Origin: Entomortierella parvispora E1425
Lineage: Eukaryota; Fungi; Mortierellomycota
NCBI GenBank assembly: GCA_020891255.1
Contig: BQFW01000002.1
Span: 434,001-498,000, forward strand
Direction of reading: 5' to 3'
Length of the DNA: 64,000 bases
A model generated the notes under the pieces. That model made no database searches. It saw only the letters and a list, made by a program, of their open reading frames with translations, and had not been told where the DNA came from. Made by a program: the position numbers and the translations under genes. Position 1 is the first letter of the stretch; each line of letters starts with the position of its first letter. This document shows, piece after piece, positions 14,943 through 31,003 of the stretch.

Positions 14943-17900
14943 ATGGCTGACCTTGCCCCCGCCACTATTGGCATTGCCCTCCCCCCTACCTCAGTTCTCA
15001 AGATCAGGGATGCATGTCTTCCTTGTCGTAAGCAACGCTCAAAGTGCGATGGTCAAGCAATCTGCTCCCGCTGTGCTCGCCTCGAGCTCGACTGCACCTA
15101 TGTAGAACTGGTCAAAGCTCCCAAACACATCCCCAAAGAACCTTGGCAGGAGTTCCTCAGCACTACAGGCGCCAAGCCGGAGGCATTGGAGATACCTCCG
15201 AGCGAACTCCTCAAGGATGCGACTTCGGGACCTGTTCAGGATGCCTCAACTTTCCCTTGGCAAAGGTCCAAGATGGCACGGCGCCGGAAACAGGCTCCTT
15301 CTGCCAAGAAGTGTACCTGTCCAGTTCCTCCCGCAGCTGACTCCTCGAATGATCTTGCTGGCCAGGATTCAATGGATATCAGCAGCTCCAACCCAACTGA
15401 AGACCCTTCGCTATCCACATCCTCTGCTGTCGATACATCTGCTGCCTCTTCACCCTCACCTTCACTCGCCTCGGCCTCCTCCAATTCCACACCCGCCTCA
15501 ACCCCAGCCGCAACAAAGCAGCGTCGAGCTCGCTCGACAACAGGACCTTGCAGAGTACACAACCCCCAGGTATCGACCAAAGCGGCTCGATCTGTCACTC
15601 CATCCATGTCATCGCCAATGTCCGCTGGGGGGCCATCCGCTGGCAGTTCAGCCAGTCTGCGACATCGACCAGCAGCACCAACCGAGCCTGCACCTCTTCC
15701 CTCCTCTGTGATCGAAACGTCAGAGAAAATTAACAGTCTGAGCTCGAAGCTCTCTCGGCTTTATGTCTTCCCGGACACGACGCAGCCACAGCCAGCACCC
15801 CCACCCCAACTCGAGATCTTGCAGTCGCGCGCACTGTCGCCCTTGCTCCAATCACATCTTATCCAGCTGTACTTGGCCCAATGCTTGCCCACACAGCCCA
15901 TTTTGGATCCTCCAACGTTCATGGCCCAACTGGCTGCTCAAGATTTTTGCACTCCCCCCCATCCACTGATCGTCGCCGCAATGTGTGCTGCTGCAGCTCG
16001 ATGCATTGATGATTCGGACGTTGAGCGTTTGTGGGCTGAGCAGGACCCACCCTTGCCCAATCCTATCTACCCCAACTTTGCAAACGGAGAGCCTCATGTG
16101 CGTTCGACCCGCGACATGATTTGGTCCATCGGAGAGTACTTTGCGGCTCTGGCCAAGGCTTACTTGCGAACAGAATTGCCGTTGGTTCAGTCTCCTGACC
16201 GGTCTGGAGGCATGGGTGATCCTCTGACAGTAGTTCAGGGACTGATTATGATCTCAACCTGGGATGCATCTGTTGGCCGTCAGCGCGAATGTCAAGCATG
16301 TGCTGCTCTGGCGTTGAGAATCATGATTGCTGGAGGCTGGCATTTAATGGACCATCCCAATGGCGATGGTTGCACAGATAGCAGGATCAAGATGTGGGGC
16401 ACCTTGGAGCGCGAGCTTGCTCGTCGCTGCTGGTGGTTTGTCTGGATTGCCGAAAAGTGGACGGCTGCCATTCTTACCCAATACGTGGTATGTGGGGCAC
16501 TTGCTTGCACCGATGCAGGGACTGGAACGCGTCTCATCCAGTGGAATGTAATCTAACGACAATAGTCATCTTTTTTTTAGACCCTTCATTTGTCGCTGTG
16601 TGAGACGCTCTCGCTTCCTCGAGAGTTCCGACAGGGCGATATACTTGACCAACGAGCAGTTAGCTACTTCCAGCAGTCGATCCAGTCGGCATACCTCTGC
16701 GGATCAATTATTCAACTACATTACCATCCCTATGAAGCAGAGGATGGCACTGAGTATGACCATGAGGCGAACATCCACGACGCCCAACGATTGCAGGCAC
16801 GTTTGACCGAAATTGACAATCATCTGGAGGCATGGTACAAGGCGATCCCAGCAAACTTCCGACCTGATTGGGGCCAAACTTCAGGGGAAGATGGCGACAG
16901 TACAGGATTTGAACCAGCTGGAAACTCGCAGTTTTTCCATGCCGGTGGTGATTGGTGGTGGCGCCATGCCATGGGAGGCTTCCTTGAGATGAACTACTTG
17001 GCGCGTAAGTCTCTCTACGTGATAGATGCACTTGCCACTCACCATTTCTGTTTTGATTAATAATCTTGTCTATTTTCTTTTGTCTGCACAGTCAAGTTGC
17101 TTCTTCACCAGCCACAACATGTCATATCTAAAGCGCCTTCACCCGTGTCTCGACTTGCACTAGCCCAGATTGCAAACAGGATTACGTTGACATGCGAAAG
17201 ACTTTGGCAGTACCCAACAACGCGGCCCTCATTTTACCATATGGCAGGAGCGGTTCTCTGGCTTGCGCTTTGCTATCAGCAGGAGAACACGTTGAGCGAT
17301 AACCCCAGAATCCGGACGCCCGCTTGTGTCAACATGCAAAAGAGCTATTTCTTGGTCAAGAAGGCAGGAAGACTCGTTCATACTAACGAGGACGAGCCTC
17401 TTACGGAGTTGGAGAGCACCAATCCTTCTGTACGTGAGCATGGATGGAACTGACGAGACATTTGTATTATTTCATTTGGTGGCACATCATTTACTTTTTT
17501 TTCTTCTTTAATCAAAATAGCAGAATGTGCCCTTCTTGCGGCCAACGGATGAGCAACGCGTCAAACCAATGATGGCCGTCTTCAAAGAGATGTTTCCAAT
17601 TATTCGTCAAGCTTTGAGAGATAAAGGGTTCGGACTCAGGACTCAACCCAACGCGACCTCAAGAGTGTCATCTAGCATGTTGTCTAATAGTCAACAGCCG
17701 CAACACACGTTGATTTTGAATGCAGATAGCACGACGACTATCGGAGGGATCACAGCCTCTGTGGAGGCATTGGGTCCAGCATCCGCCGCATCTTGTATCT
17801 CGGCAGGAGCTGCGGCTGTGATTTGTGCCAATGCGGGAGCTTCAACGCCTTCAAGCTATTACTTGGCGCCTTTGACCCCACCAGGGACTTCGAGTGCTTC

Positions 17901-18111
17901 TGTAGCCTCACCCATGAGTGAGTCTATTGGTTCGGCTCCCTCGCCTTCTCCGCCTCCTCCTTCGATGACGGCTGGGGGAAGTCATTGTCAAACCACAGCG
18001 ACGCTGGCGTCTCATGGGCTGACTGGCGTAGAGTCGAATCAATTGTTTTCTGGCATGGATACCAACATGCATCAGCAACAGCAGCAGCTTCATCATCATC
18101 AACAACAACAG

Positions 18112-18170
<59 letters not shown>

Positions 18171-18696
18171 GCAGCAGCAGCAGCAGCAGCAACAGCTCCA
18201 TCAACAGCAAATGCAACAATACCAGCAACAGCAAGCATCATTATTTCACACTCATCAGAACTCACCTCTGGGCCATGTACAATACAATCCTCAGCAGCCA
18301 CCTTCGGGTCTCCCAACTATGTCCTCTGGGGCGACAACCCCTCAAGGGTTCACGCCTCAATCGCCCCATCCTCAGACTTACCATGCTCAGCAGCAAGGAT
18401 TCCCGATGCAACAACAGCAGACAGCTCCTTACTCTCAGCAACAACAACAACAACAACAACAACAGCAGCAACGGTCGCAGATACCTCGTCAGCAACAACA
18501 GCATGGCATGCCATTACAGCAACAGCATCAGCAACAGCAACAACAAGCTTCGATGATGTCGTCGAACCTCACGGATCCGCTGCAGTCGATCATGAACATG
18601 AACCCAGACCCGTTCAGCTCCATTATGCAGAACGAGCCCAATGTCCTGTCGTCCCTGATCGATTATTCAGAATGGTTGAACCACTCGTTGGAGTAA
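14943..18696 (+). CDS. Zn(II)2Cys6 transcription factor with fungal TF middle domain and polyQ C-terminus (multi-exon)
   Basis: ACLPCRKQRSKCDGQAICSRCARLELDCTY binuclear cluster. Middle-homology-like segments (VVQGLIMIS, ERELARRCWWFVWIAEKW). Further exons at about 16581-17004, 17092-17430 and 17520-18696. Confidence 0.9.
18068..18236 (+). repeat. CAA/CAG trinucleotide tract encoding polyQ
   Basis: Long (CAA)n/(CAG)n run inside the Zn2Cys6 C-terminal exon. Confidence 0.9.
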
Positions 18697-19000
18697 AGAT
18701 CGAGGATTGGAGTGTAATAAAAATACCATATTGTACAATGTTTTTTTTTCTCAGGTCCTGTTTATTAACAATTAATGATGGTGCTGGTGGTATGTTTTTT
18801 TGTCATTCCCTGGTATCTGTCTCGTTGGTTTCTTCGTGATCATCATGATGGGACTGTAGAGTGTGTGGTCTGCCCTGGCGAAAAGAGGTCCGTGGGGTCC
18901 AACTCAATTAGCTTCTCTTTTCCACCACTTTTTTTTTTGTCAGCCATGGATCCTCTTTTTTCTTCCTTTTTTTTTCTTTTGATGTTGATGCTTTCAAAAC

Positions 19001-19490
19001 TTATTGATGATAATTGTCGATGGAGCCCGTAAATTGAGGGTTGTTGGAAACGGGGGCGACATAGGTAGTGTCAGGGGCCACATATTGAGGTCCATGAGAA
19101 GAGACGACAGGCTTTGAGACTGCGGGGACGGTGGAGGCTGCTGTCGAGTCATGGTATTGTTGCTGCTCGCCGCCTCCTCCAACAACAACAGGCGAAGAGG
19201 CTGTCACGGCGGGTGAAGACTCAAAGATAGTCGTCGTCGCGTTCTCAGAGGACATTGTTGTCATTGCAGGTGAACCGTAGGTAGCCGTGGAGGCGGCAAG
19301 GTATTGGGTGGGCATTGGCATAGGCATTGGAATTGGGGTAGACGTGCTAGTACCAATATGCTGAGCGCTGTTGATGGAGCCCACGGTCGCAATGCCCTCT
19401 GTCACTGGAGACGCAGGAGGGTAAAACTGCTGCTGCTGCTGCTGCGGCGGCGGCGGTTGCTGTTGTTGGTTAACGTAGTATCCGGCGTAT

Positions 19491-19522
<32 letters not shown>

Positions 19523-20609
19523 TTGCAATTGCTGTTGATACAACTGTTGTTGCTGCTGTTGTTGAAATTGCTGTTGCTGTTGCTGCTGATATTGCTGCTC
19601 GGGCGTGGGGAAGTATGCCTGCTGAGGAGGAGCCTGTTGTTGCACAAACTGCTGTTGCTGAGGGGGAGGTGGTGGCTGCTGATAGTTCACCTGCTGCATG
19701 GGAGGAGGTGGTGGCAACGCCGCCACGGTCACTTCTGAAATTTTTGAGTTTGGTTTGTTGTTCCTGCCTCTGTAATAGAAGAAGAGGCCAATGCCCAAGA
19801 TCACGACCGCAACGCCTGCACCGATTCCTGCGTACAGGGCCGTATGGTTGCTGCTGCCGCTCCCACTGCTGCTGCTGCTGCTGCTTCCACTGTTTCCACT
19901 TCCAATGGTAGAGGTAGGAAAGTTCAAGTTGGTGGGTCCATATGGATTGGCTATTTTAAACATTGCGCAACAGAAAAGGGCACGTACATCCATTAGTAAG
20001 TTTTGAGCGCGAGGGAGCATCACAGAGTTCATTATTTGTTCTTTGTGTGGCAATGACAATGACATGAGAGCCGAAAAAAAAAATTGATCGCACCAACAAC
20101 CGCCCCCAACAACAAAAAGTCGGACTCCCTTTCATGCGACACAACAGGAAAGAACAGAGGACTTACGAGGAACATTTGATTTGCATCCCTGACTGTAAGC
20201 AGCGACAGTCAAAGAAGCATTCTTCTCTGTAGGTAGAGTGATCAAGCATGGGTAGCAGGTTGCTATGTAGAAAAAAAAAATCGTATGTGTCAGACGTGGG
20301 TTTCTCAACGATACAAATGAATGAAAGTGTTGCCGCTATCTCAACTTTTCCGTACTGTATTCTTGAATGACAGTGGCCGTGCAGAGACAAGGAAGCATGG
20401 CAACTGTGACATTCCTAGAGGAGAAGGATACAAAAGGAGGAGAGAAAGAGAGAGGTGCTGCGAATTAGAGGTGAACTCGCCAGGTGGGGGTGGGTTGATG
20501 GTCGGCAACCGGTCGCAGGTGGTTGGTTGGTCTCGTACATTCCAAGGGTGCACGCCTCGTAGGACGTGTAGAAGGACATACAGTCCGTGAGAACACAGGA
20601 GGACGTCAT
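19001..20609 (-). CDS. Single-pass membrane protein with an N-terminal 8-Cys (CFEM-like) ectodomain and a Gln/Pro-rich cytoplasmic tail (4 exons)
   Basis: Phase-compatible GT-AG splicing gives MTSSCVLTDCMSFYTSYEACTLGM|NVTVAMLPCLCTATVIQEY|TTCYPCLITLPTEKNASLTVAAYSQGCKSNVP|PNPYGPT..., then a Ser/Gly linker, TM helix LYAGIGAGVAVVILGIGLFFYY and basic RGRNNK. Confidence 0.7.
19430..19590 (-). repeat. CAG/CAA polyQ tract
   Basis: (CTG/TTG)n on the + strand within the membrane-protein tail. Confidence 0.85.
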
Positions 20610-23907: not shown

Positions 23908-26900
23908 ATGAGCCTGGGTGCCGACGGTTTACGGCCGAGTCTAAGGACGCCTCAGCAGGTTATAGTCGAGATTTCCAACTGGCTCAGTCTCGTTGGGTCC
24001 ATCGTCATCATTCTGCATATTCCAAAGGTCATAAAACAGGTGCCCACACAGCGGACGAGAATGTTGATCATCATGTTTACAGCGATCTCCAACACGGGAT
24101 TTGCTCTAGCCAACGTCATAACAGGTATGAAGCGTCGAACTCTTCGGACTTTTTTTTTGATTGTCTGGAGAAACATGTTCTCACACTGATTGCATGCGAC
24201 CACCGAAGTCTCTGCTCAAATGACTAAAACATTCATTTCTCCTGTTTAATTGCAATAGATCTGACGTCCGCAACAGCTTACCTTCCATGCAGCGTCTCCG
24301 CTTGGTGCTATGTAAGCACTCTGGCAAAATCTCTTCATATCCGTTTGCAGATGTTACATCATAATCCTTTGAAGCTAATGTGTGGCCATTCGCGCCTTTC
24401 CTAGATCTTCTTTCAACTTTTGACATGTTCCTTGGTCATTGTCAGCACATTTCGACTCTGCGGCGTATTTCTTTTCAAACAGCAAAGGCCTTTCCCGACG
24501 AAAGCCATAATCCTCTGCCCGTTGCTAGCCTTTATACTCGCATCAACTCCTGCAGTAGCTGGACAGTATGCTTTCGACCCTTGTGGACATTATTGTTGGT
24601 TTCGACTCGAAGAGGTTGTGAACTGCAGGGTTCGATCGCTCTGGGCCTGGTTCTGCTTTTACATTTGGATGATCGTCTTCCTCTGCATTCTCTTTGGGTC
24701 GACATCGTTTGTGATGATCAAGATCGCGGTCACAGTCATGAGCTCTCGATCTGCCTTGAATAAGGTCGTAAATGCGGGCAGGGACGAGTCGTTTGTCTCA
24801 GCAGATCTTGCAGATTCCCCTCAACCTCCGTCCGTATCAACCTTTGAGCGACTCCGGTCTATGAGTCAAGCATTCACTACAAGGACCGCATCAATTTTGT
24901 CGCATTTGAGTTTAAAGCACGAAGGACATTCGCAAGCGGCGGGTCAAGGGAACCAAATCAAAAATGAAGATATCCCAGTGAGCGACATTCGGATTGAGCT
25001 GACCCAACCTGAGCAAGAGATGCCACTGGCAGCCCCCTCAGCCGCCCATATCAATAGGATGGCATCGCTTGGTCTGGACTCACCCACACTCCGGAGCGAG
25101 GGAATTTTGGCCGCTGCAGTCGACAATGCATCCGCCACAGGAATCGCGATGCCGGATCAGACACAATCTCTCGAAGCGACCCGCACACGCTCGCCAATGC
25201 AACTTGTACCACCAAATAATCATTTTGACAGTGGCGGACCTACACCGATCCTCCGCTCCAAAGAACGGCCATTTCTCCTGGCCATCTTACGTCAGGCCCT
25301 GTATCCGATCTCGATCTCAGTCTCTGGATGTATTCAAACAATCGTGGACTTGACCTTGACTACAGAGAGCCCAAATGTAGATGCGATCGACTACGCAGCC
25401 AATATCGGAACCAGTATCCAAGGGTTCCTCTTCTTCCTGGTGTTCATGTTTGACCCTGCTGTAGTTCAAACACGCCAGAACTACCGAAAGTATTTAATCT
25501 GGAAGTATTACGTCGAGTTTTACTACAGTCTGGGAATGCCTCACGAGGGACGATCGTTTGAGGATGCCTTTCTCCAAAAATGCAGAGACAACTTGGACAA
25601 ACCCCAGAATGTTGCCCAGTTTGATCAGTTAACGAGGCCTCCACCATACTCGTGGTCAATCCAATACGACGACCTGGCCATGCCCTCAGACTTCCAGACC
25701 GCATATCCATTGACGGATTCCCGAGGCCGCAGTCCAAGCGGTAGAACATCAGCTACAGCGGAAGGACGAAGAGGGTCAGCGGAAGGACGAAGAGGGTCGG
25801 GACCAAGAGTTGGTCAATTGAACGCACCTTTCGGATCGAGTCGAAGCAATAGCCCATCAAAGCTACGAGACCCACCTTCAACCATTATCGAGGACGATGA
25901 AACTCCTTCAACTACTGCCACGTCGTTAGACTTGAGTCGTTCAGGGGTTCATGACTCCCAGGACCGAAAATCTTTTGATTTCATGAGTCGACCCCCGATC
26001 ACCGAGACGGTCGCGAGACCAGCGGATTATACCCATTTGCAATCTATTCCACATCCGCTTGCGAACGAACCCGTTCCATCTTCATCTCCATCTACTTCTG
26101 TAGAGTCATTCTCAGCGTCGAGCGACCCTCCAATGTCCTTGTCGATCGTTGTGCCGTCTGATGCAACTCGCACAAAGCCAGAAGGAGAAGGGCAAGACGC
26201 AGAGATGGACACCAGCCTAACACCAGCCAGCCCAGAGGAGCCCTCACACTTGTCCTTCGTACGGTCTGGAGGCCGAGCGACTTGGCCACGGAGCAGTGCC
26301 CCAGCACTGAATACGTCTATCAGTTTCAGCAGCAGTGACGGTGACGATATCGTTGACGCGTTCGGGATCTCAAAAGTTTCTGATCATAGCCGTCAATACT
26401 CCTTGAGGGCACCACAAGCAGGGGATGTCTTGACTTTCCAGAAGCTGGATAGGGTGACAACGATCGGTGGAAGTGACCTTCGAACGCCTCATCGCATCTA
26501 CAGACCGTCCATGGCCTCATCGAATAGTCGGAGGAGGACCATGGCAACGATGCGAGGGTCTTCAAAGTCTTCTTCACTGGGAAACATGCTCAATCTTAGT
26601 AGTCCTCTTCGGTTCCTGTCCAGCGGTCCTTCCTCCAACAAAGACCAACCTCATGTGGCCGGAGGCGAACAAAATCAGGAATATCAGCTACAGCTGTCAG
26701 ACAGGGGTGTTGGAGAGCAGGGTCGTTATCAATGTCATTTCCACTTTCCTCGAATGGCGTATTTGATGCATCAGATTGTTCGACTGCTTTACATTCCGAG
26801 AGAAGCTCGACTGCCGCCGATCCCGAACCCGTTCTCGACGGTGAGCCGGTCGCAGGCCTGCGAGGAAATGGATACTCGAACTCGAACGCCATCGGTTCGA

Positions 26901-26981
26901 CAACGGCAAGATGACGAAGAGCTGTGGTTGGACATGGTAACCTCCCCTGACCACGGAGGTCGTGTTGCACGAGCAGAATGA
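23908..26981 (+). CDS. 7TM G-protein-coupled receptor, cAMP-receptor/Git3-like (exons 23908-24124, 24259-24311, 24405-26981)
   Basis: Seven hydrophobic helices: SNWLSLVGSIVIILHI; IIMFTAISNTGFALANVI; PCSVSAWCYIFFQLLTCSLVIVSTF; AIILCPLLAFILASTP; HYCWF...FCFYIWMIVFLCILFGS; QALYPISISVSGCIQTI; SIQGFLFFLVFMFDP. Long third loop and long C-tail. Splice phases were checked. Confidence 0.8.
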
Positions 26982-27680: not shown

Positions 27681-30600
27681 ATGCCTTCCATGGCCTCCAC
27701 AACAGCAACAATGACAGCTGCAGCACCAGCAACAGACGCGTCGCAGAATCATATCAACCACAAAGTCAAGATCTTTATGCAAGTTGCTTTCTTTTCTTGC
27801 ACCGATAATCGAGATGTTCTCTCCTCTCTCTTCTCTCACGGTGCACGGGTCGCGGACAAAGGCATGGGTACCGACAATGCGAATGGGAATGAAGGACATG
27901 GACATTGCGTAGCCCTCCTTCATTCCGTTCTGCTTAACCATGGCCCGTGAGCGAGTCTCCATGACACGCAGGGAGGAGAGAAGACATTCATGACCTTAAT
28001 GTCGTTTACAGTTTTTTTTAAACTAATCACCTTGACCTTTCATTGTTGCATCCCATTAGACCCTGCCATTATGACCTCTCTCAAGTGGAGACCTGCGCTC
28101 CGTTCCTGGACCGGTATGGAGGCGTCGTCTTTGTGTACGATTGGAATGTGGCCAAGGACCAAATCACGGACTACTACAGACGCCAATATCCAGATGGCTG
28201 GGTCAAGGTCGTACCCTTCTCTCTCAGAAACATCCTCGATTCCATCAAGCATCTGGACCATCGACTAGAACGACATGACAACAGCCACCCTACCTCCAGC
28301 ACTCTAGTCCAGGACGCCAGCTATAGTAGCAATGGCAGTTTGAACAGTCAAGCGAGCAGTGGCAGTAACGGGAGCCAAGAGGCCAAAAAACTGCACCAAG
28401 TCGTTTTCTTATTGACAGCGTCTATGAACGTGGATTACGGAACGTTCGGACTGACCCAGAAAAAGATCCTGGATGCGATCAAAGAGGCCTTGCCGGAACG
28501 GGTGCGGGCCGTGAACGTGATCGGCCACTGCATGTATGGTTGTGCGTCCTGCTCTGGTGTGGAGCACAAAGTGCCCCTGTACTTTACGCGGTACTTTAAC
28601 AGATCGTAAGTGAAAAACACTGCTTGCAGCAGACTGGGGTTCAAGGATTCAGACAAAACTGGGACAAGAGACTAAAACACACTTTTTCTTTTTTCATTCC
28701 AGGCTACCGTACACCGCCAAGGATGTTCTGGCCCTCTACGCAGCAAACACTCGACTGAACAATCACGCTCAGACAATAGCCAGTGGTCAAACAAAGGTGG
28801 CGCACGCGGTGTTGGTGGCACCATCCTGTGGCAGCACCTCCATGATTGCTCAAAAGTCTATGATCCAACTCTTTCATCGCCTGGAACAAACCGGCGAATG
28901 GAAGTTTGTCTGGAAGATGCACCCAACTTCCTTGCACTTGGATGGCTACGACACTACGGATGAAACAGGGGCTGAGCAGGCCGAGCTTGAAAACGTCAAG
29001 TTTATTCTTGAAAACTTTACAGTTACGCTCGAGGAACACGCTTGTCTGTTGCCATTCATGGAGGCGTTTGATGTGATTATTACGGATCTGCACTCGTCCG
29101 TACCGTTCATTGCGACCTATTTCACACCCAAGGTCATCCTCAGTTACTTTAATGATGCCGACTATGGAACGCCGGAGCGACATGACGACTTCATGAATCA
29201 ACTGACCACGTTTGTTGAGCCCCACGAGCTGGAGGGCTTGTTACAGAACCTTCCCAAGCCAAAGGGAGATCCTTCGTTCTTCTTCAGTCAATATGGCCAT
29301 GTTGATGGCCATGAAGACCTTCGGTTCGGAAACCTGGCCAAGTGGCCAACAGAACAGGTATGGACCTAATTATTGACAACTCCCACACACTTGACATCTA
29401 GGCTGCGCGATATTTAATCTGACCCTTCCTTTCTCTTTGCACAATTAGTTCGAAGCTACGCAACCTTTTCTCTATCGTCAGTCGATGGCACAGATCGCAC
29501 ATGAATGGAAGACTATATACAAATCGATGAAGGAATCAAACCCGGACGACGTTGAGGGGATCAAGAACGCGCTCGGATTTGATGTAAAATTCCCATTGCT
29601 GGAGGGGGAGGTCGATTTACCGAAGACGTTGCCTAGGATCCTGCCTCGTGAGCGTCGTGCTGCTGGTATCGAGCTGAGGATCATGTCCTTCAACATTTGG
29701 AATGGAGGACTCTCTGGTGGTCAACCTTTGGAGCAAACTGCCAACGCAATTTTGGCTTCTGGCGCTGATGTTGTTGGTCTACAAGGTGAGGAAGCTGTTT
29801 TGCAAAAAAAAAAAAAAAAAAAAGCCTGAGCCAAAGCTGACCCTGTAAATTTCTGACCCTCTAGAGTGCTCCTCGACTGTTGACGACATTACTGGTAAAC
29901 GGCAGTATATGTTGCCAGAGTTGATCAAGTTTCTACCAGGATGGTATTATAGTGACCAACGTCTGCGCGATACCAGCACAGGATCCCGCAACCCATGGGG
30001 CGTGGTCTCAAAATTTCCGATTGTGAACACGACAGAAATGGGTTTTGGCGTGAAAATTCAGCTCAACAACCATCGTCATCCTGAAATCGAGCCTTCCTAC
30101 CATGGATTCCCCGAGTATCAGTACACAAATCTTAGTGAATCCATGGCAAGTGCGTCTCTGAACGGAGGCAGCAGCGTCACACATGACTACAGCAATCACT
30201 ACAGCAACCACCACAACCAACATGGTCAACGGAGCAACAACACGCGATTCATGTATCTCTTCAACTGTCACCTTTACTATTTCCCATACCAGCCATTCCA
30301 GTTACTGAAGATTCCATACTCCACCCAACCTTTCTTGGACACTGCTGAGGAAGCAGTCCAGTCCTGCAAAGAGGCGCGTGGCGAGGAGATGGATATGATC
30401 TTACGGGAGCTTCAAGAAACGGCCGACCAGGAGCCAGATGTGCCAATATTCTTGACAGGAGATTTCAACGAGCCAAGTCATCTGGATTGGTCTCCACTTG
30501 CTGTAATGGCAGGCCTTCAGCCACTGCAGGTCAAATGGCCATCGACTGAAACTCTTTACAAAGCAGGTCTCGTGGACCTTTGGCGTGCTTTCTCGGGAAA

Positions 30601-31003
30601 TAGCGCTTCCGCAACAAGTCCTCAATCTGCCCATCCGCATGCGCACACCAGCGGCTCAGTTAGTCTTCCCTCAGCTACTTCTCCTCCACTCAGCAGCAGC
30701 AGCAATGTCTTTACAAATGGTACCAGCCCCTTGATGCTGGATCCTCGCGATCATGCTGAGCTACAGTTGATTGAAAGACCCGGGCTTACGTGGACCTGCC
30801 TCAAGCCAGAGACCGACCCCACGGATCATTACGATCGGATCGACTTCATTTTTGGCCTAGATCGAGAGTCGTCCCCAATCGCACTGAAGGAGGTCGCTTG
30901 CAAGATGGGTGAGGATATTGGACGCGTGGGCGAAAAGAATGAAAAGATCTGCAGACCTTGGCCGTCAGATCACCGCGCTGTCATAGCCACGGTTCTTTTG
31001 TAA
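27681..31003 (+). CDS. 980-aa fusion of an N-terminal CDP-glycerol/ribitol:glycerophosphotransferase-like (TagF/TagB, GT-B) domain and a C-terminal EEP phosphoesterase (exons 27681-27946, 28060-28605, 28703-29357, 29449-29785, 29865-31003)
   Basis: Five exons with canonical GT-AG introns sum to 2943 nt in one open frame. TagF-like motifs: VLVAPSCGS, KFVWKMHP, FDVIITDLHSSVPFIATYF. EEP motifs: IMSFNIW, ADVVGLQE, NCHLYYFPYQP, LTGDFNEPSH, DRIDFIF, WPSDHRAV. Confidence 0.78.

What the first reader, a model, noticed from the sequence alone, without database searches (positions are those of the whole stretch)
27681..31003. Intron-containing fungal gene fusing a teichoic-acid/capsule polymerase-like (TagF) domain to a bacterial-type EEP phosphoesterase
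Five exons splice into one 980-aa frame (seen). The N-half carries APS, KMHP and DVIITDLHSS motifs that I recognise as the APT / xxHP / DxxITDYSS pattern of CDP-glycerol glycerophosphotransferases (PF04464). These enzymes build poly(polyol-phosphate) wall teichoic acids and group 2 capsules in bacteria (established). The C-half is a complete EEP domain with an HL...PYQP insertion that I associate with bacterial EEPs. Multi-domain bacterial capsule polymerases couple TagF-like and phosphatase domains. A transferase-plus-phosphoesterase enzyme in a fungus could point to an undescribed polyol-phosphate polymer or glycophospholipid synthesis/editing pathway, possibly acquired horizontally and then domesticated with introns (inference). 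No signal peptide is evident, which suggests a cytosolic enzyme.
Basis: partly seen in the sequence, partly recalled or inferred. Interest (0 to 1): 0.75.

Follow-up and report, generated by a model that had tools for sequence, protein, structure and literature searches.

The report
Fungal TagF-like transferase fused to phosphoesterase
A real gene of an early-diverging (Mortierella-type) fungus joins a two-lobed transferase domain, whose shape is closest to bacterial teichoic-acid/capsule polymerases, to a bacterial-type phosphoesterase. The transferase half belongs to a small, unnamed, uncharacterised family scattered across eukaryotes rather than being a recent bacterial import.

Summary
The gene is real and the fusion is real. 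Exons 2-5 are collinear with database orthologues, and a relative carries both halves in one uninterrupted ORF.

- **Exon 1:** A GC-AG intron starting at 27779 would give 924 aa, not 980.
- **N-half:** Pfam PF04464 and every other sequence model miss it. An AlphaFold model of the 76-80% identical Linnemannia orthologue is a confident GT-B fold. All four TagF-like PDB representatives (TarL, Bcs3-CroT, Cps3D, TagF) fall in the top five of an unbiased fold search, tied with UDP-GlcNAc 2-epimerase. The family keeps two histidines at the topological positions of the TagF catalytic pair.
- **Family size and range:** only 74 hits in 1.84 billion representatives. Members occur in Mortierellaceae and Blastocladiella (fused to EEP), in Amoebozoa and a choanoflagellate (fused to TTLL12-type SET-like domains, with a TTL ligase domain where the protein is complete), in a rotifer and a euglenozoan, and in Myxococcota (fused to ATP-grasp, beside a nucleotidyltransferase and LicD).
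- **C-half:** a complete EEP whose nearest relatives are secreted bacterial EEPs (E about 1e-45).

Function is untested. This is a new variant of a known kind.

The parts
27681..27778 (+). Exon 1, preferred short form (ATG to KVKIF + AT, phase 2)
   Evidence: It aligns with P0128 residues 2-16. L001 has its donor at the same place, followed by an in-frame stop. The family alignment is continuous across this join.
27779..27946 (+). More likely it is the 5' part of a GC-AG intron 1 (27779-28059, donor GCAAGT).
   Evidence: The frame is open, but the residues match no homologue and are not conserved in L001. This is undecided without RNA.
28060..28605 (+). Exon 2: N-terminal Rossmann half of the GT-B domain, including a low-complexity Ser/Asn insert
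   Evidence: 76% identical to P0128 residues 18-201. The model of P0128 has strands and helices at pLDDT >90 outside the insert.
28523..28576 (+). Loop GHCMYGCASCSGVEHKVP: a near-invariant His followed by a C-x3-C-x2-C group. It lies after strand 5 of the N-lobe, where TagF-like enzymes carry their catalytic base.
   Evidence: G175, H176, C177 and C181 are near-invariant in A2. The strand is E168-173 in the model. The CroT base H96 sits in the beta5-alpha4 loop, and TarL H300 in the loop after beta15.
28703..29357 (+). Exon 3: C-terminal Rossmann half of the GT-B domain (the nucleotide-binding lobe in TagF-like enzymes)
   Evidence: 80% identical to P0128 residues 203-413. Language-model features point to PF04464 clusters (0.95; 19 of 30 hits).
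28809..28841 (+). VLVAPSCGSTS loop (Pro invariant in the family)
   Evidence: P235 is invariant in A2. The loop follows strand E229-234. It is topologically loop 1 of CroT.
28911..28925 (+). WKMHP: Lys and His invariant
   Evidence: K266 and H268 are invariant in A2. The motif follows strand E261-265. This is the position of CroT H233 and TarL H433.
29073..29108 (+). VIITDLHSSVPF: conserved Asp and two Ser
   Evidence: S326 is invariant; D323 and S327 are near-invariant. The motif follows strand E319-323. It is topologically loop 3 of CroT.
29449..29785 (+). Exon 4: linker with the conserved ALGF tail of the GT-B family, then the start of the EEP domain (MSFNIWNGG, VVGLQ)
   Evidence: 75% identical to P0128 residues 414-527. 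The EEP Asn and the LQE motif are conserved.
29865..31003 (+). Exon 5: the rest of the EEP domain plus the stop codon. It holds two low-complexity inserts specific to Mortierellaceae.
30260..30307 (+). FNCHLYYFPYQPFQLL: EEP catalytic His followed by the family-specific PYQPYQLL insertion
   Evidence: P161, Y162, P164, Q166 and L167 are invariant in fungal plus bacterial members.

Best explanation
This is a resident, vertically inherited gene of Mortierellaceae that encodes a cytosolic two-enzyme protein.

Residues up to about 410 form a GT-B domain of an unnamed family. The family is distantly related to TagF-like CDP-alditol phosphotransferases and to UDP-GlcNAc 2-epimerases.

By analogy with TagF, TarL and CroT, the C-terminal lobe (the APS, KxHP and D..SS loops) would hold a nucleotide-diphosphate-activated donor. 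The His of the GHC loop in the N-terminal lobe would activate an acceptor hydroxyl. The domain would then transfer a phospho-alcohol (less likely a sugar) and release NMP or NDP.

The C-terminal EEP domain has the full Mg-dependent catalytic set. It descends from secreted bacterial EEPs. It would then hydrolyse a phosphoester on the same substrate or product.

A transferase coupled to a phosphoesterase in one chain is, in outline, the arrangement seen in the Bcs3 capsule machine.

- **Shown:** the gene model (except the exon 1 donor), the fusion, both folds, residue conservation and the taxonomic spread.
- **Inferred:** donor, acceptor, chemistry and the coupling between the two domains.
For: **The fusion is real.** The annotated orthologues P0128 (Linnemannia) and P0133 (Blastocladiella) carry both domains. 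P0136 is one uninterrupted 791-aa ORF on a eukaryotic contig. All EEP-fused N-domains form one clade with 100/97 support.

**Catalytic residues.** Two conserved His (H268 invariant, H176 near-invariant) sit in the loops that topologically match the two essential His of TagF-like enzymes.

**Bacterial context.** Bacterial family members lie beside an NTP-transferase fusion, and in L002 beside LicD, which fits a nucleotide-activated phospho-alcohol donor.

Against: - No sequence method links the N-half to PF04464. Pfam at E<=10 fails on the window exons and on 23 members. NCBIfam, profile against PDB and two large profile searches also fail.
- The structural scores tie with UDP-GlcNAc 2-epimerases.
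- The His equivalence rests on topology, not on a residue-level superposition.
- The Trp that stacks on the TagF/TarL catalytic His is Gly here. The loop carries a Cys cluster that TagF lacks.
- The spacing between the two His is about 92 residues, against 133-140 in TagF-like enzymes.
- The usual fusion partners elsewhere are TTL or ATP-grasp ligases, which could point to a different kind of substrate.
- The models are of an orthologue, not of the window protein itself.
- No expression data were available.
Confidence: 0.5

Rival explanations
1. The N-half is an NDP-sugar enzyme: a 2-epimerase-like or ordinary GT-B glycosyltransferase using UDP- or GDP-sugars, not a phospho-alcohol transferase. 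The EEP would act as a sugar-phosphate or lipid phosphoesterase on the product.
Against: No PF02350 hit at E<=10. The Atlas fold search and the language-model search both put PF04464 first. The A-P-S/T and K-x-H-P motif forms resemble TagF more than epimerases (own knowledge of the Pfam logos, not tested here).
Confidence: 0.25
2. The N-domain is a protein-directed or regulatory module. Its ancestral partners are protein-modifying ligases of the TTLL12 type (SET-like domain plus TTL). In fungi the partner was replaced by an EEP that works on a protein-linked or nucleic-acid phosphodiester, in the manner of TDP2 or nocturnin.
Against: The bacterial ATP-grasp and SET proteins show no BLASTP similarity to the eukaryotic TTL/SET_TTL parts, so the parallel holds only at superfamily level. 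The bacterial clusters look like small-molecule or polymer biosynthesis with an ABC exporter. Invariant active-site-like residues argue for catalysis.
Confidence: 0.15
3. The fusion is a gene-model artefact: two adjacent genes, a GT-B gene and an EEP gene, are transcribed separately in this fungus.
For: No RNA evidence could be obtained. Exon 4 begins with a linker. Some database entries are fragments that hold only one half.
Against: The frame stays open through exon 4 from the GT-B tail into the EEP start, with no stop. Introns 3 and 4 are only 91 and 79 nt with canonical sites. P0136 has both halves in a single ORF. Annotated fused models exist in Linnemannia, Blastocladiella, Modicella, Gamsiella and Lobosporangium.
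Confidence: 0.03

Closest known systems
TagF-like polyol-phosphate transferases (S. epidermidis TagF 3L7I-M, S. aureus TarL 8VA1, Bcs3 CroT domain 8A0C, App Cps3D 8QOY; Pfam PF04464)
   Different: There is no HMM-level similarity. The fungal protein has no predicted membrane-anchoring or polymerase N-domain and is a cytosolic eukaryotic protein. Gly replaces the Trp next to the catalytic His. The catalytic loop carries a C-x3-C-x2-C cluster. The spacing between the two His is shorter.
UDP-GlcNAc 2-epimerases (4ZHT, 1F6D, NeuC; Pfam PF02350)
   Different: No HMM hit. Language-model and Atlas fold neighbours favour PF04464. The epimerase acid/base residues were not examined.
Bcs3, the Haemophilus influenzae type b capsule multi-enzyme (PMC10299916)
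   Same: One polypeptide couples a TagF-like transferase with a phosphate-removing enzyme.
   Different: The Bcs3 phosphatase is HAD-like, not EEP. Bcs3 also has a ribosyltransferase and an SH3b domain. It is bacterial and its function is known.
Secreted bacterial EEP proteins of about 320 aa (e.g. P0043 Rhizobium sp., P0075 Planctomyces sp.; PF03372)
   Same: 35-38% identity by BLASTP, 40-46% in the trimmed alignment. The catalytic residues are the same, and so is the PYQPYQLL..PF..TAEEA insertion.
   Different: The bacterial proteins have signal peptides and stand alone with no conserved neighbours. The fungal domain is internal, has no signal peptide and carries low-complexity inserts.
Eukaryotic TTLL12-type proteins with an extra N-terminal domain (Mastigamoeba P0149, Dracoamoeba P0147, Salpingoeca P0155)
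   Same: Their N-terminal 350 residues or so are homologous to the N-half here (E 1e-18 to 1e-28).
   Different: They continue with SET_TTL (PF25556), and the complete ones also with TTL (PF03133), instead of an EEP.

Membership tests
PF04464 Glyphos_transf (TagF-like) | Significant match to the family HMM | tested here: not met
   No hit at E<=10 for any window exon or for any of 23 family members. NCBIfam also gave none. Profile searches never reached a PF04464 protein.
TagF-like transferases | GT-B fold closest to solved TagF-like enzymes | tested here: met
TagF-like transferases | Two invariant catalytic histidines (TagF H444/H584, TarL H300/H433, CroT H96/H233) | tested here: inconclusive
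   H176 (at least 90% conserved) and H268 (invariant) occupy the topologically matching loops. No residue-level superposition could be made, and the neighbouring Trp is missing.
TagF-like transferases | Use of a CDP-alditol donor with release of CMP | not testable with these tools
   This needs an enzyme assay. The only indirect hint is that bacterial members sit beside an NTP-transferase and LicD.
TagF-like transferases | Membrane association through amphipathic helices (stated in PMC10901376) | not tested
   No helix analysis was done. The shorter spacing between the two His suggests the inserted helices may be absent.
PF02350 UDP-GlcNAc 2-epimerase | Match to the family HMM | tested here: not met
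PF03372 Endonuclease/exonuclease/phosphatase | Match to the family HMM above the gathering score | tested here: met
   The orthologue P0128 scores 33.8 bits against a cut-off of 24.5. The window's exon 5 alone scores 22.5 bits because intron 4 cuts the domain.
PF03372 Endonuclease/exonuclease/phosphatase | Catalytic Asn, Glu, His, Asp/Asn, Asp and Asp-His residues | tested here: met
   SFNIWNGG, LQ-E, NCHL, GDFNEPSH, DRIDF and SDH are all present in the window. They are invariant or nearly so in the 30-sequence alignment.
PF03372 Endonuclease/exonuclease/phosphatase | EEP four-layer alpha/beta sandwich fold | tested here: met
TTLL12-type proteins | SET_TTL and TTL domains | tested here: not met
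   No such domains occur in any window exon. They are present only in non-fungal relatives.

The most novel reading that the evidence does not exclude
The N-half defines an unnamed, ancient family of TagF-like phosphotransferases with a Cys/His (possibly metal-binding) catalytic loop. From Myxococcota to Amoebozoa and choanoflagellates this family works together with ATP-grasp/TTL-type ligases. Early fungi exchanged that partner for a bacterial EEP. It would then mark an undescribed phospho-alcohol (teichoic-acid-like) modification of a eukaryotic protein, lipid or polymer, and would give TTLL12-type proteins a biochemical context.
Probability: 0.2. Interest if true: 0.8.

Novelty: new variant of a known kind. 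Interest (0 to 1): 0.55.

Why it matters
TagF-like chemistry, which builds phosphodiester-linked polyol phosphates from CDP-alditols, is regarded as bacterial. A conserved eukaryotic family with the same fold and a matching His pair would therefore be unexpected. It is fused to a phosphoesterase in fungi and to TTLL12-like ligases in protists, which suggests an unexplored modification or polymer in eukaryotes.

The finding also offers a handle on TTLL12-type proteins, whose activity is unclear. The gene is present in Mortierella alpina, for which genetic tools exist as far as I know (not checked here), so the idea is testable.

If the domain turns out to be an ordinary sugar transferase, the finding is a modest annotation gain for a "hypothetical protein".

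Tried and rejected
**Sequence searches that found nothing for exons 1-4**
- Pfam and NCBIfam.
- phmmer or hmmsearch against PDB sequences, with single exons, with the family profile and with a bacterial EEP.
- The Atlas feature search of exon 2.
- A last word-index profile search at E<=1 meant to bridge to PF04464. It returned only family members.

**Steps that could not be run**
- Profile-profile comparison with PF04464 could not be run, because no TagF-like sequence was available by reference and I did not type one from memory.
A three-sequence alignment worked.

**Ideas tested and dropped**
- That the bacterial ATP-grasp+SET protein is a direct TTLL12 homologue: BLASTP shows no similarity.
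- That an alternative first exon starts inside intron 1: the open frame upstream of the conserved GTGAGC in L001 has no ATG and is not similar to the window's 56 residues.
- That the neighbourhoods of bacterial EEP homologues are informative: they are not.

**Literature**
- Searches found no paper on this family.

**Handling of the spliced model**
- All searches were made exon by exon by reference. Full-length work used database orthologues.
Full report
**Gene model**

They total 2943 nt, which is 980 codons plus a stop. The four introns are GT..AG, 113, 97, 91 and 79 nt long, and the phases are compatible.

Every search was made exon by exon by reference. Database orthologues served as full-length proxies.

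**Orthologues and the exon 1 problem**

- The word-index search with exon 3 found only seven fungal fragments. One lies on a Logan contig, L001, that has the same exon layout and the same upstream gene.
- Exon-wise BLASTP against the Linnemannia zychae protein P0128 (881 aa, annotated as hypothetical) is strictly collinear. Exon 2 matches residues 18-201 (76% identity), exon 3 matches 203-413 (80%), exon 4 matches 414-527 (75%) and exon 5 matches 529-881 (61%).
- The Lobosporangium model P0011 uses the same 3/4 and 4/5 joins.
- The first 32 codons match P0128 residues 2-16, but the following 56 codons (27777-27944) match nothing.
- In the full-length family members the strand ending in F/Y-I/V-P-x-H is continuous.
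- L001 has its donor immediately after KVKIF+AT (AT|GTAAGC), with a stop codon behind it.

In the window the same spot reads AT|GCAAGT. A GC-AG intron, 27779-28059, with the same acceptor and phase, would give 924 aa. I consider this the likelier product (about 65:35).

**The organism**

The organism is a Mortierella-type fungus. The best relatives are Linnemannia, Entomortierella, Modicella, Gamsiella, Lobosporangium and Mortierella alpina. The upstream membrane-protein gene is syntenic in L001 and in Entomortierella, where the annotation merged the two genes into P0129.

**The N-half: sequence level**

Sequence models give nothing.
- Pfam and NCBIfam at E<=10: no hit.
- PDB sequences: no hit.
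- Pfam on all 23 members of the family alignment A2: no hit.
- An exhaustive HMM search of 1.84 billion representatives with the exon 3 profile found only 74 proteins.
- A final profile search at E<=1 added only more Mortierellaceae.

By Pfam's own criterion, the domain is therefore not a member of PF04464.

**The N-half: structure level**

The picture differs at fold level.
- AlphaFold2 on P0128:1-425 with A2 gave pLDDT 82.7 and pTM 0.82, with two Rossmann-like lobes.
- Foldseek puts UDP-GlcNAc 2-epimerase and TagF first.
- The search of 48,161 PDB representatives, which does not depend on Foldseek, again places all four TagF-like clusters in the top five. Ordinary GT-B glycosyltransferases score 13.9 or lower.
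- The ESM Atlas fold search returns PF04464 clusters first, TM 0.62-0.67.
- Language-model features of the window's own exon 3 return PF04464 clusters in 19 of 30 hits at 0.95.

**The N-half: conserved residues**

The invariant or near-invariant residues of the family are H176 in a G-H-C loop, P235 in A-P-S, K266 and H268 in K-x-H-P, and D323, S326 and S327. They fall right after strands E168-173, E229-234, E261-265 and E319-323 of the model. These are the loops that carry the CroT catalytic base H96, loop 1, H233 and loop 3, and the essential TarL pair H300/H433.

This is a topological equivalence, not a residue-level superposition. Three differences from TagF stand out:
- Gly replaces the stacking Trp.
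- The two His are about 92 residues apart, rather than 133-140.
- The catalytic loop carries C-x3-C-x2-C (C-x5-C-x2-C in bacteria). This could be a metal site and has no counterpart in TagF.

**Distribution and partners of the N-domain**

- *Fused to EEP:* Mortierellaceae, Blastocladiella emersonii (P0133), and metagenomic eukaryotes including P0136. P0136 carries both halves in a single uninterrupted 791-aa ORF among eukaryotic genes.
- *Fused to SET_TTL plus TTL (the TTLL12 type):* Dracoamoeba and Mastigamoeba. The same pair follows directly in L003. The Salpingoeca protein shows the SET_TTL domain only.
- *No partner domain seen:* stand-alone in a rotifer; the partner in Entosiphon was not examined.
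- *Bacteria:* only Myxococcota-type MAGs were found. There the domain is the C-terminal half of an ATP-grasp protein. Each of these clusters also holds an ABC exporter. L002 and L004 also hold an NTP-transferase/aminotransferase fusion, and L002 and L005 a methyltransferase. L002 further has LicD, more ATP-grasp genes and SET genes.

In the maximum-likelihood tree the bacterial clade is separated by a long branch (100/100). All EEP-fused sequences form one clade (100/97), and the TTL-fused sequences lie in the other eukaryotic group. The EEP fusion thus arose once, before Mortierellomycota and Blastocladiomycota split or by transfer between them. The N-half does not look like a recent bacterial import.

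The bacterial ATP-grasp and SET proteins show no BLASTP similarity to the eukaryotic TTL/SET_TTL parts. That parallel holds only at superfamily level.

**The C-half**

- Exon 5 alone gives a sub-threshold PF03372 hit because intron 4 splits the domain. The orthologue passes the cut-off.
- The word-index search found 1256 relatives. After six fungal entries, all of the best 120 come from bacteria or metagenomes. These are proteins of about 320 aa with signal peptides, 35-38% identical, E about 1e-45.
- The 30-sequence alignment shows every EEP catalytic residue and the PYQPYQLL..PF..TAEEA insertion to be invariant. It also shows two low-complexity inserts specific to Mortierellaceae.
- The bacterial homologues are monocistronic with uninformative neighbours. 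At most there is a weak hint of phosphate scavenging.

A bacterial origin of this half is plausible but old.

**Reading**

The best-supported explanation is a cytosolic bifunctional enzyme. It would consist of a divergent TagF-like (or, less likely, epimerase- or glycosyltransferase-like) GT-B transferase that uses a nucleotide-activated donor. In one chain it is coupled to an active EEP phosphoesterase acting on the same substrate or product.

The gene, the fusion, both folds and the conserved residues are shown. The donor, the acceptor and the coupling are inferred.

- *Correct:* the TagF-like resemblance, though it is structural only, and the bacterial-type EEP.
- *Not supported:* recent horizontal acquisition of the TagF-like half, and the 980-aa length.

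No paper on this family was found. Public annotations call the proteins "hypothetical" or "endonuclease/exonuclease/phosphatase".

Noticed in passing
window 28523-28576 (and A2 columns around P0128 H176-H189): The loop that should carry the catalytic base reads G-H-C-x3-C-x2-C-x4-H. The His and the first two Cys are at least 90% conserved, and the third Cys is mostly conserved. Bacterial members have C-x5-C-x2-C. This may be a Zn or Fe-S site, which would be unusual for a GT-B enzyme.
   Followed up: partly
It could be an alternative donor or a regulatory element.
   Followed up: partly
L002 1-13550 (Logan SRR31245166); also L004 and L005: These are Myxococcota-type gene clusters. L002 holds LicD, three ATP-grasp genes (one fused to this GT-B-like domain and one fused to SET), an NTP-transferase/aminotransferase fusion, a SET gene, a methyltransferase and an ABC exporter. 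It looks like an uncharacterised biosynthetic cluster. It echoes the eukaryotic GT-B+SET+TTL fusion only at superfamily level.
   Followed up: partly
L003 7001-10775 (GCA_027487435.1): A 413-aa member of the family is followed 38 nt later by a SET_TTL+TTL gene on the same strand. This is probably one TTLL12-type gene split by the gene caller.
   Followed up: no
window 24420-26981 (+): This is the upstream gene, a long ORF with a conserved membrane-protein-like core (ILRQALYPISISVSGCIQ...). It is syntenic in L001 and in Entomortierella. In Entomortierella the public model P0129 (1455 aa) wrongly merges it with the GT-B/EEP gene.
   Followed up: partly
window 29804-29823: A run of 20 A lies inside intron 4.
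   Followed up: no
window 17527-20065: Two long ORFs on opposite strands are very rich in Gln, Pro and Ser low-complexity sequence (poly-Q tracts).
   Followed up: no
L006 1-14376 (ENA metagenome scaffold): The single-ORF fused homologue P0136 sits between a PI-PLC gene and a GDSL lipase gene, near a P4-ATPase flippase. These are lipid-related neighbours, of doubtful meaning in a eukaryote.
   Followed up: no
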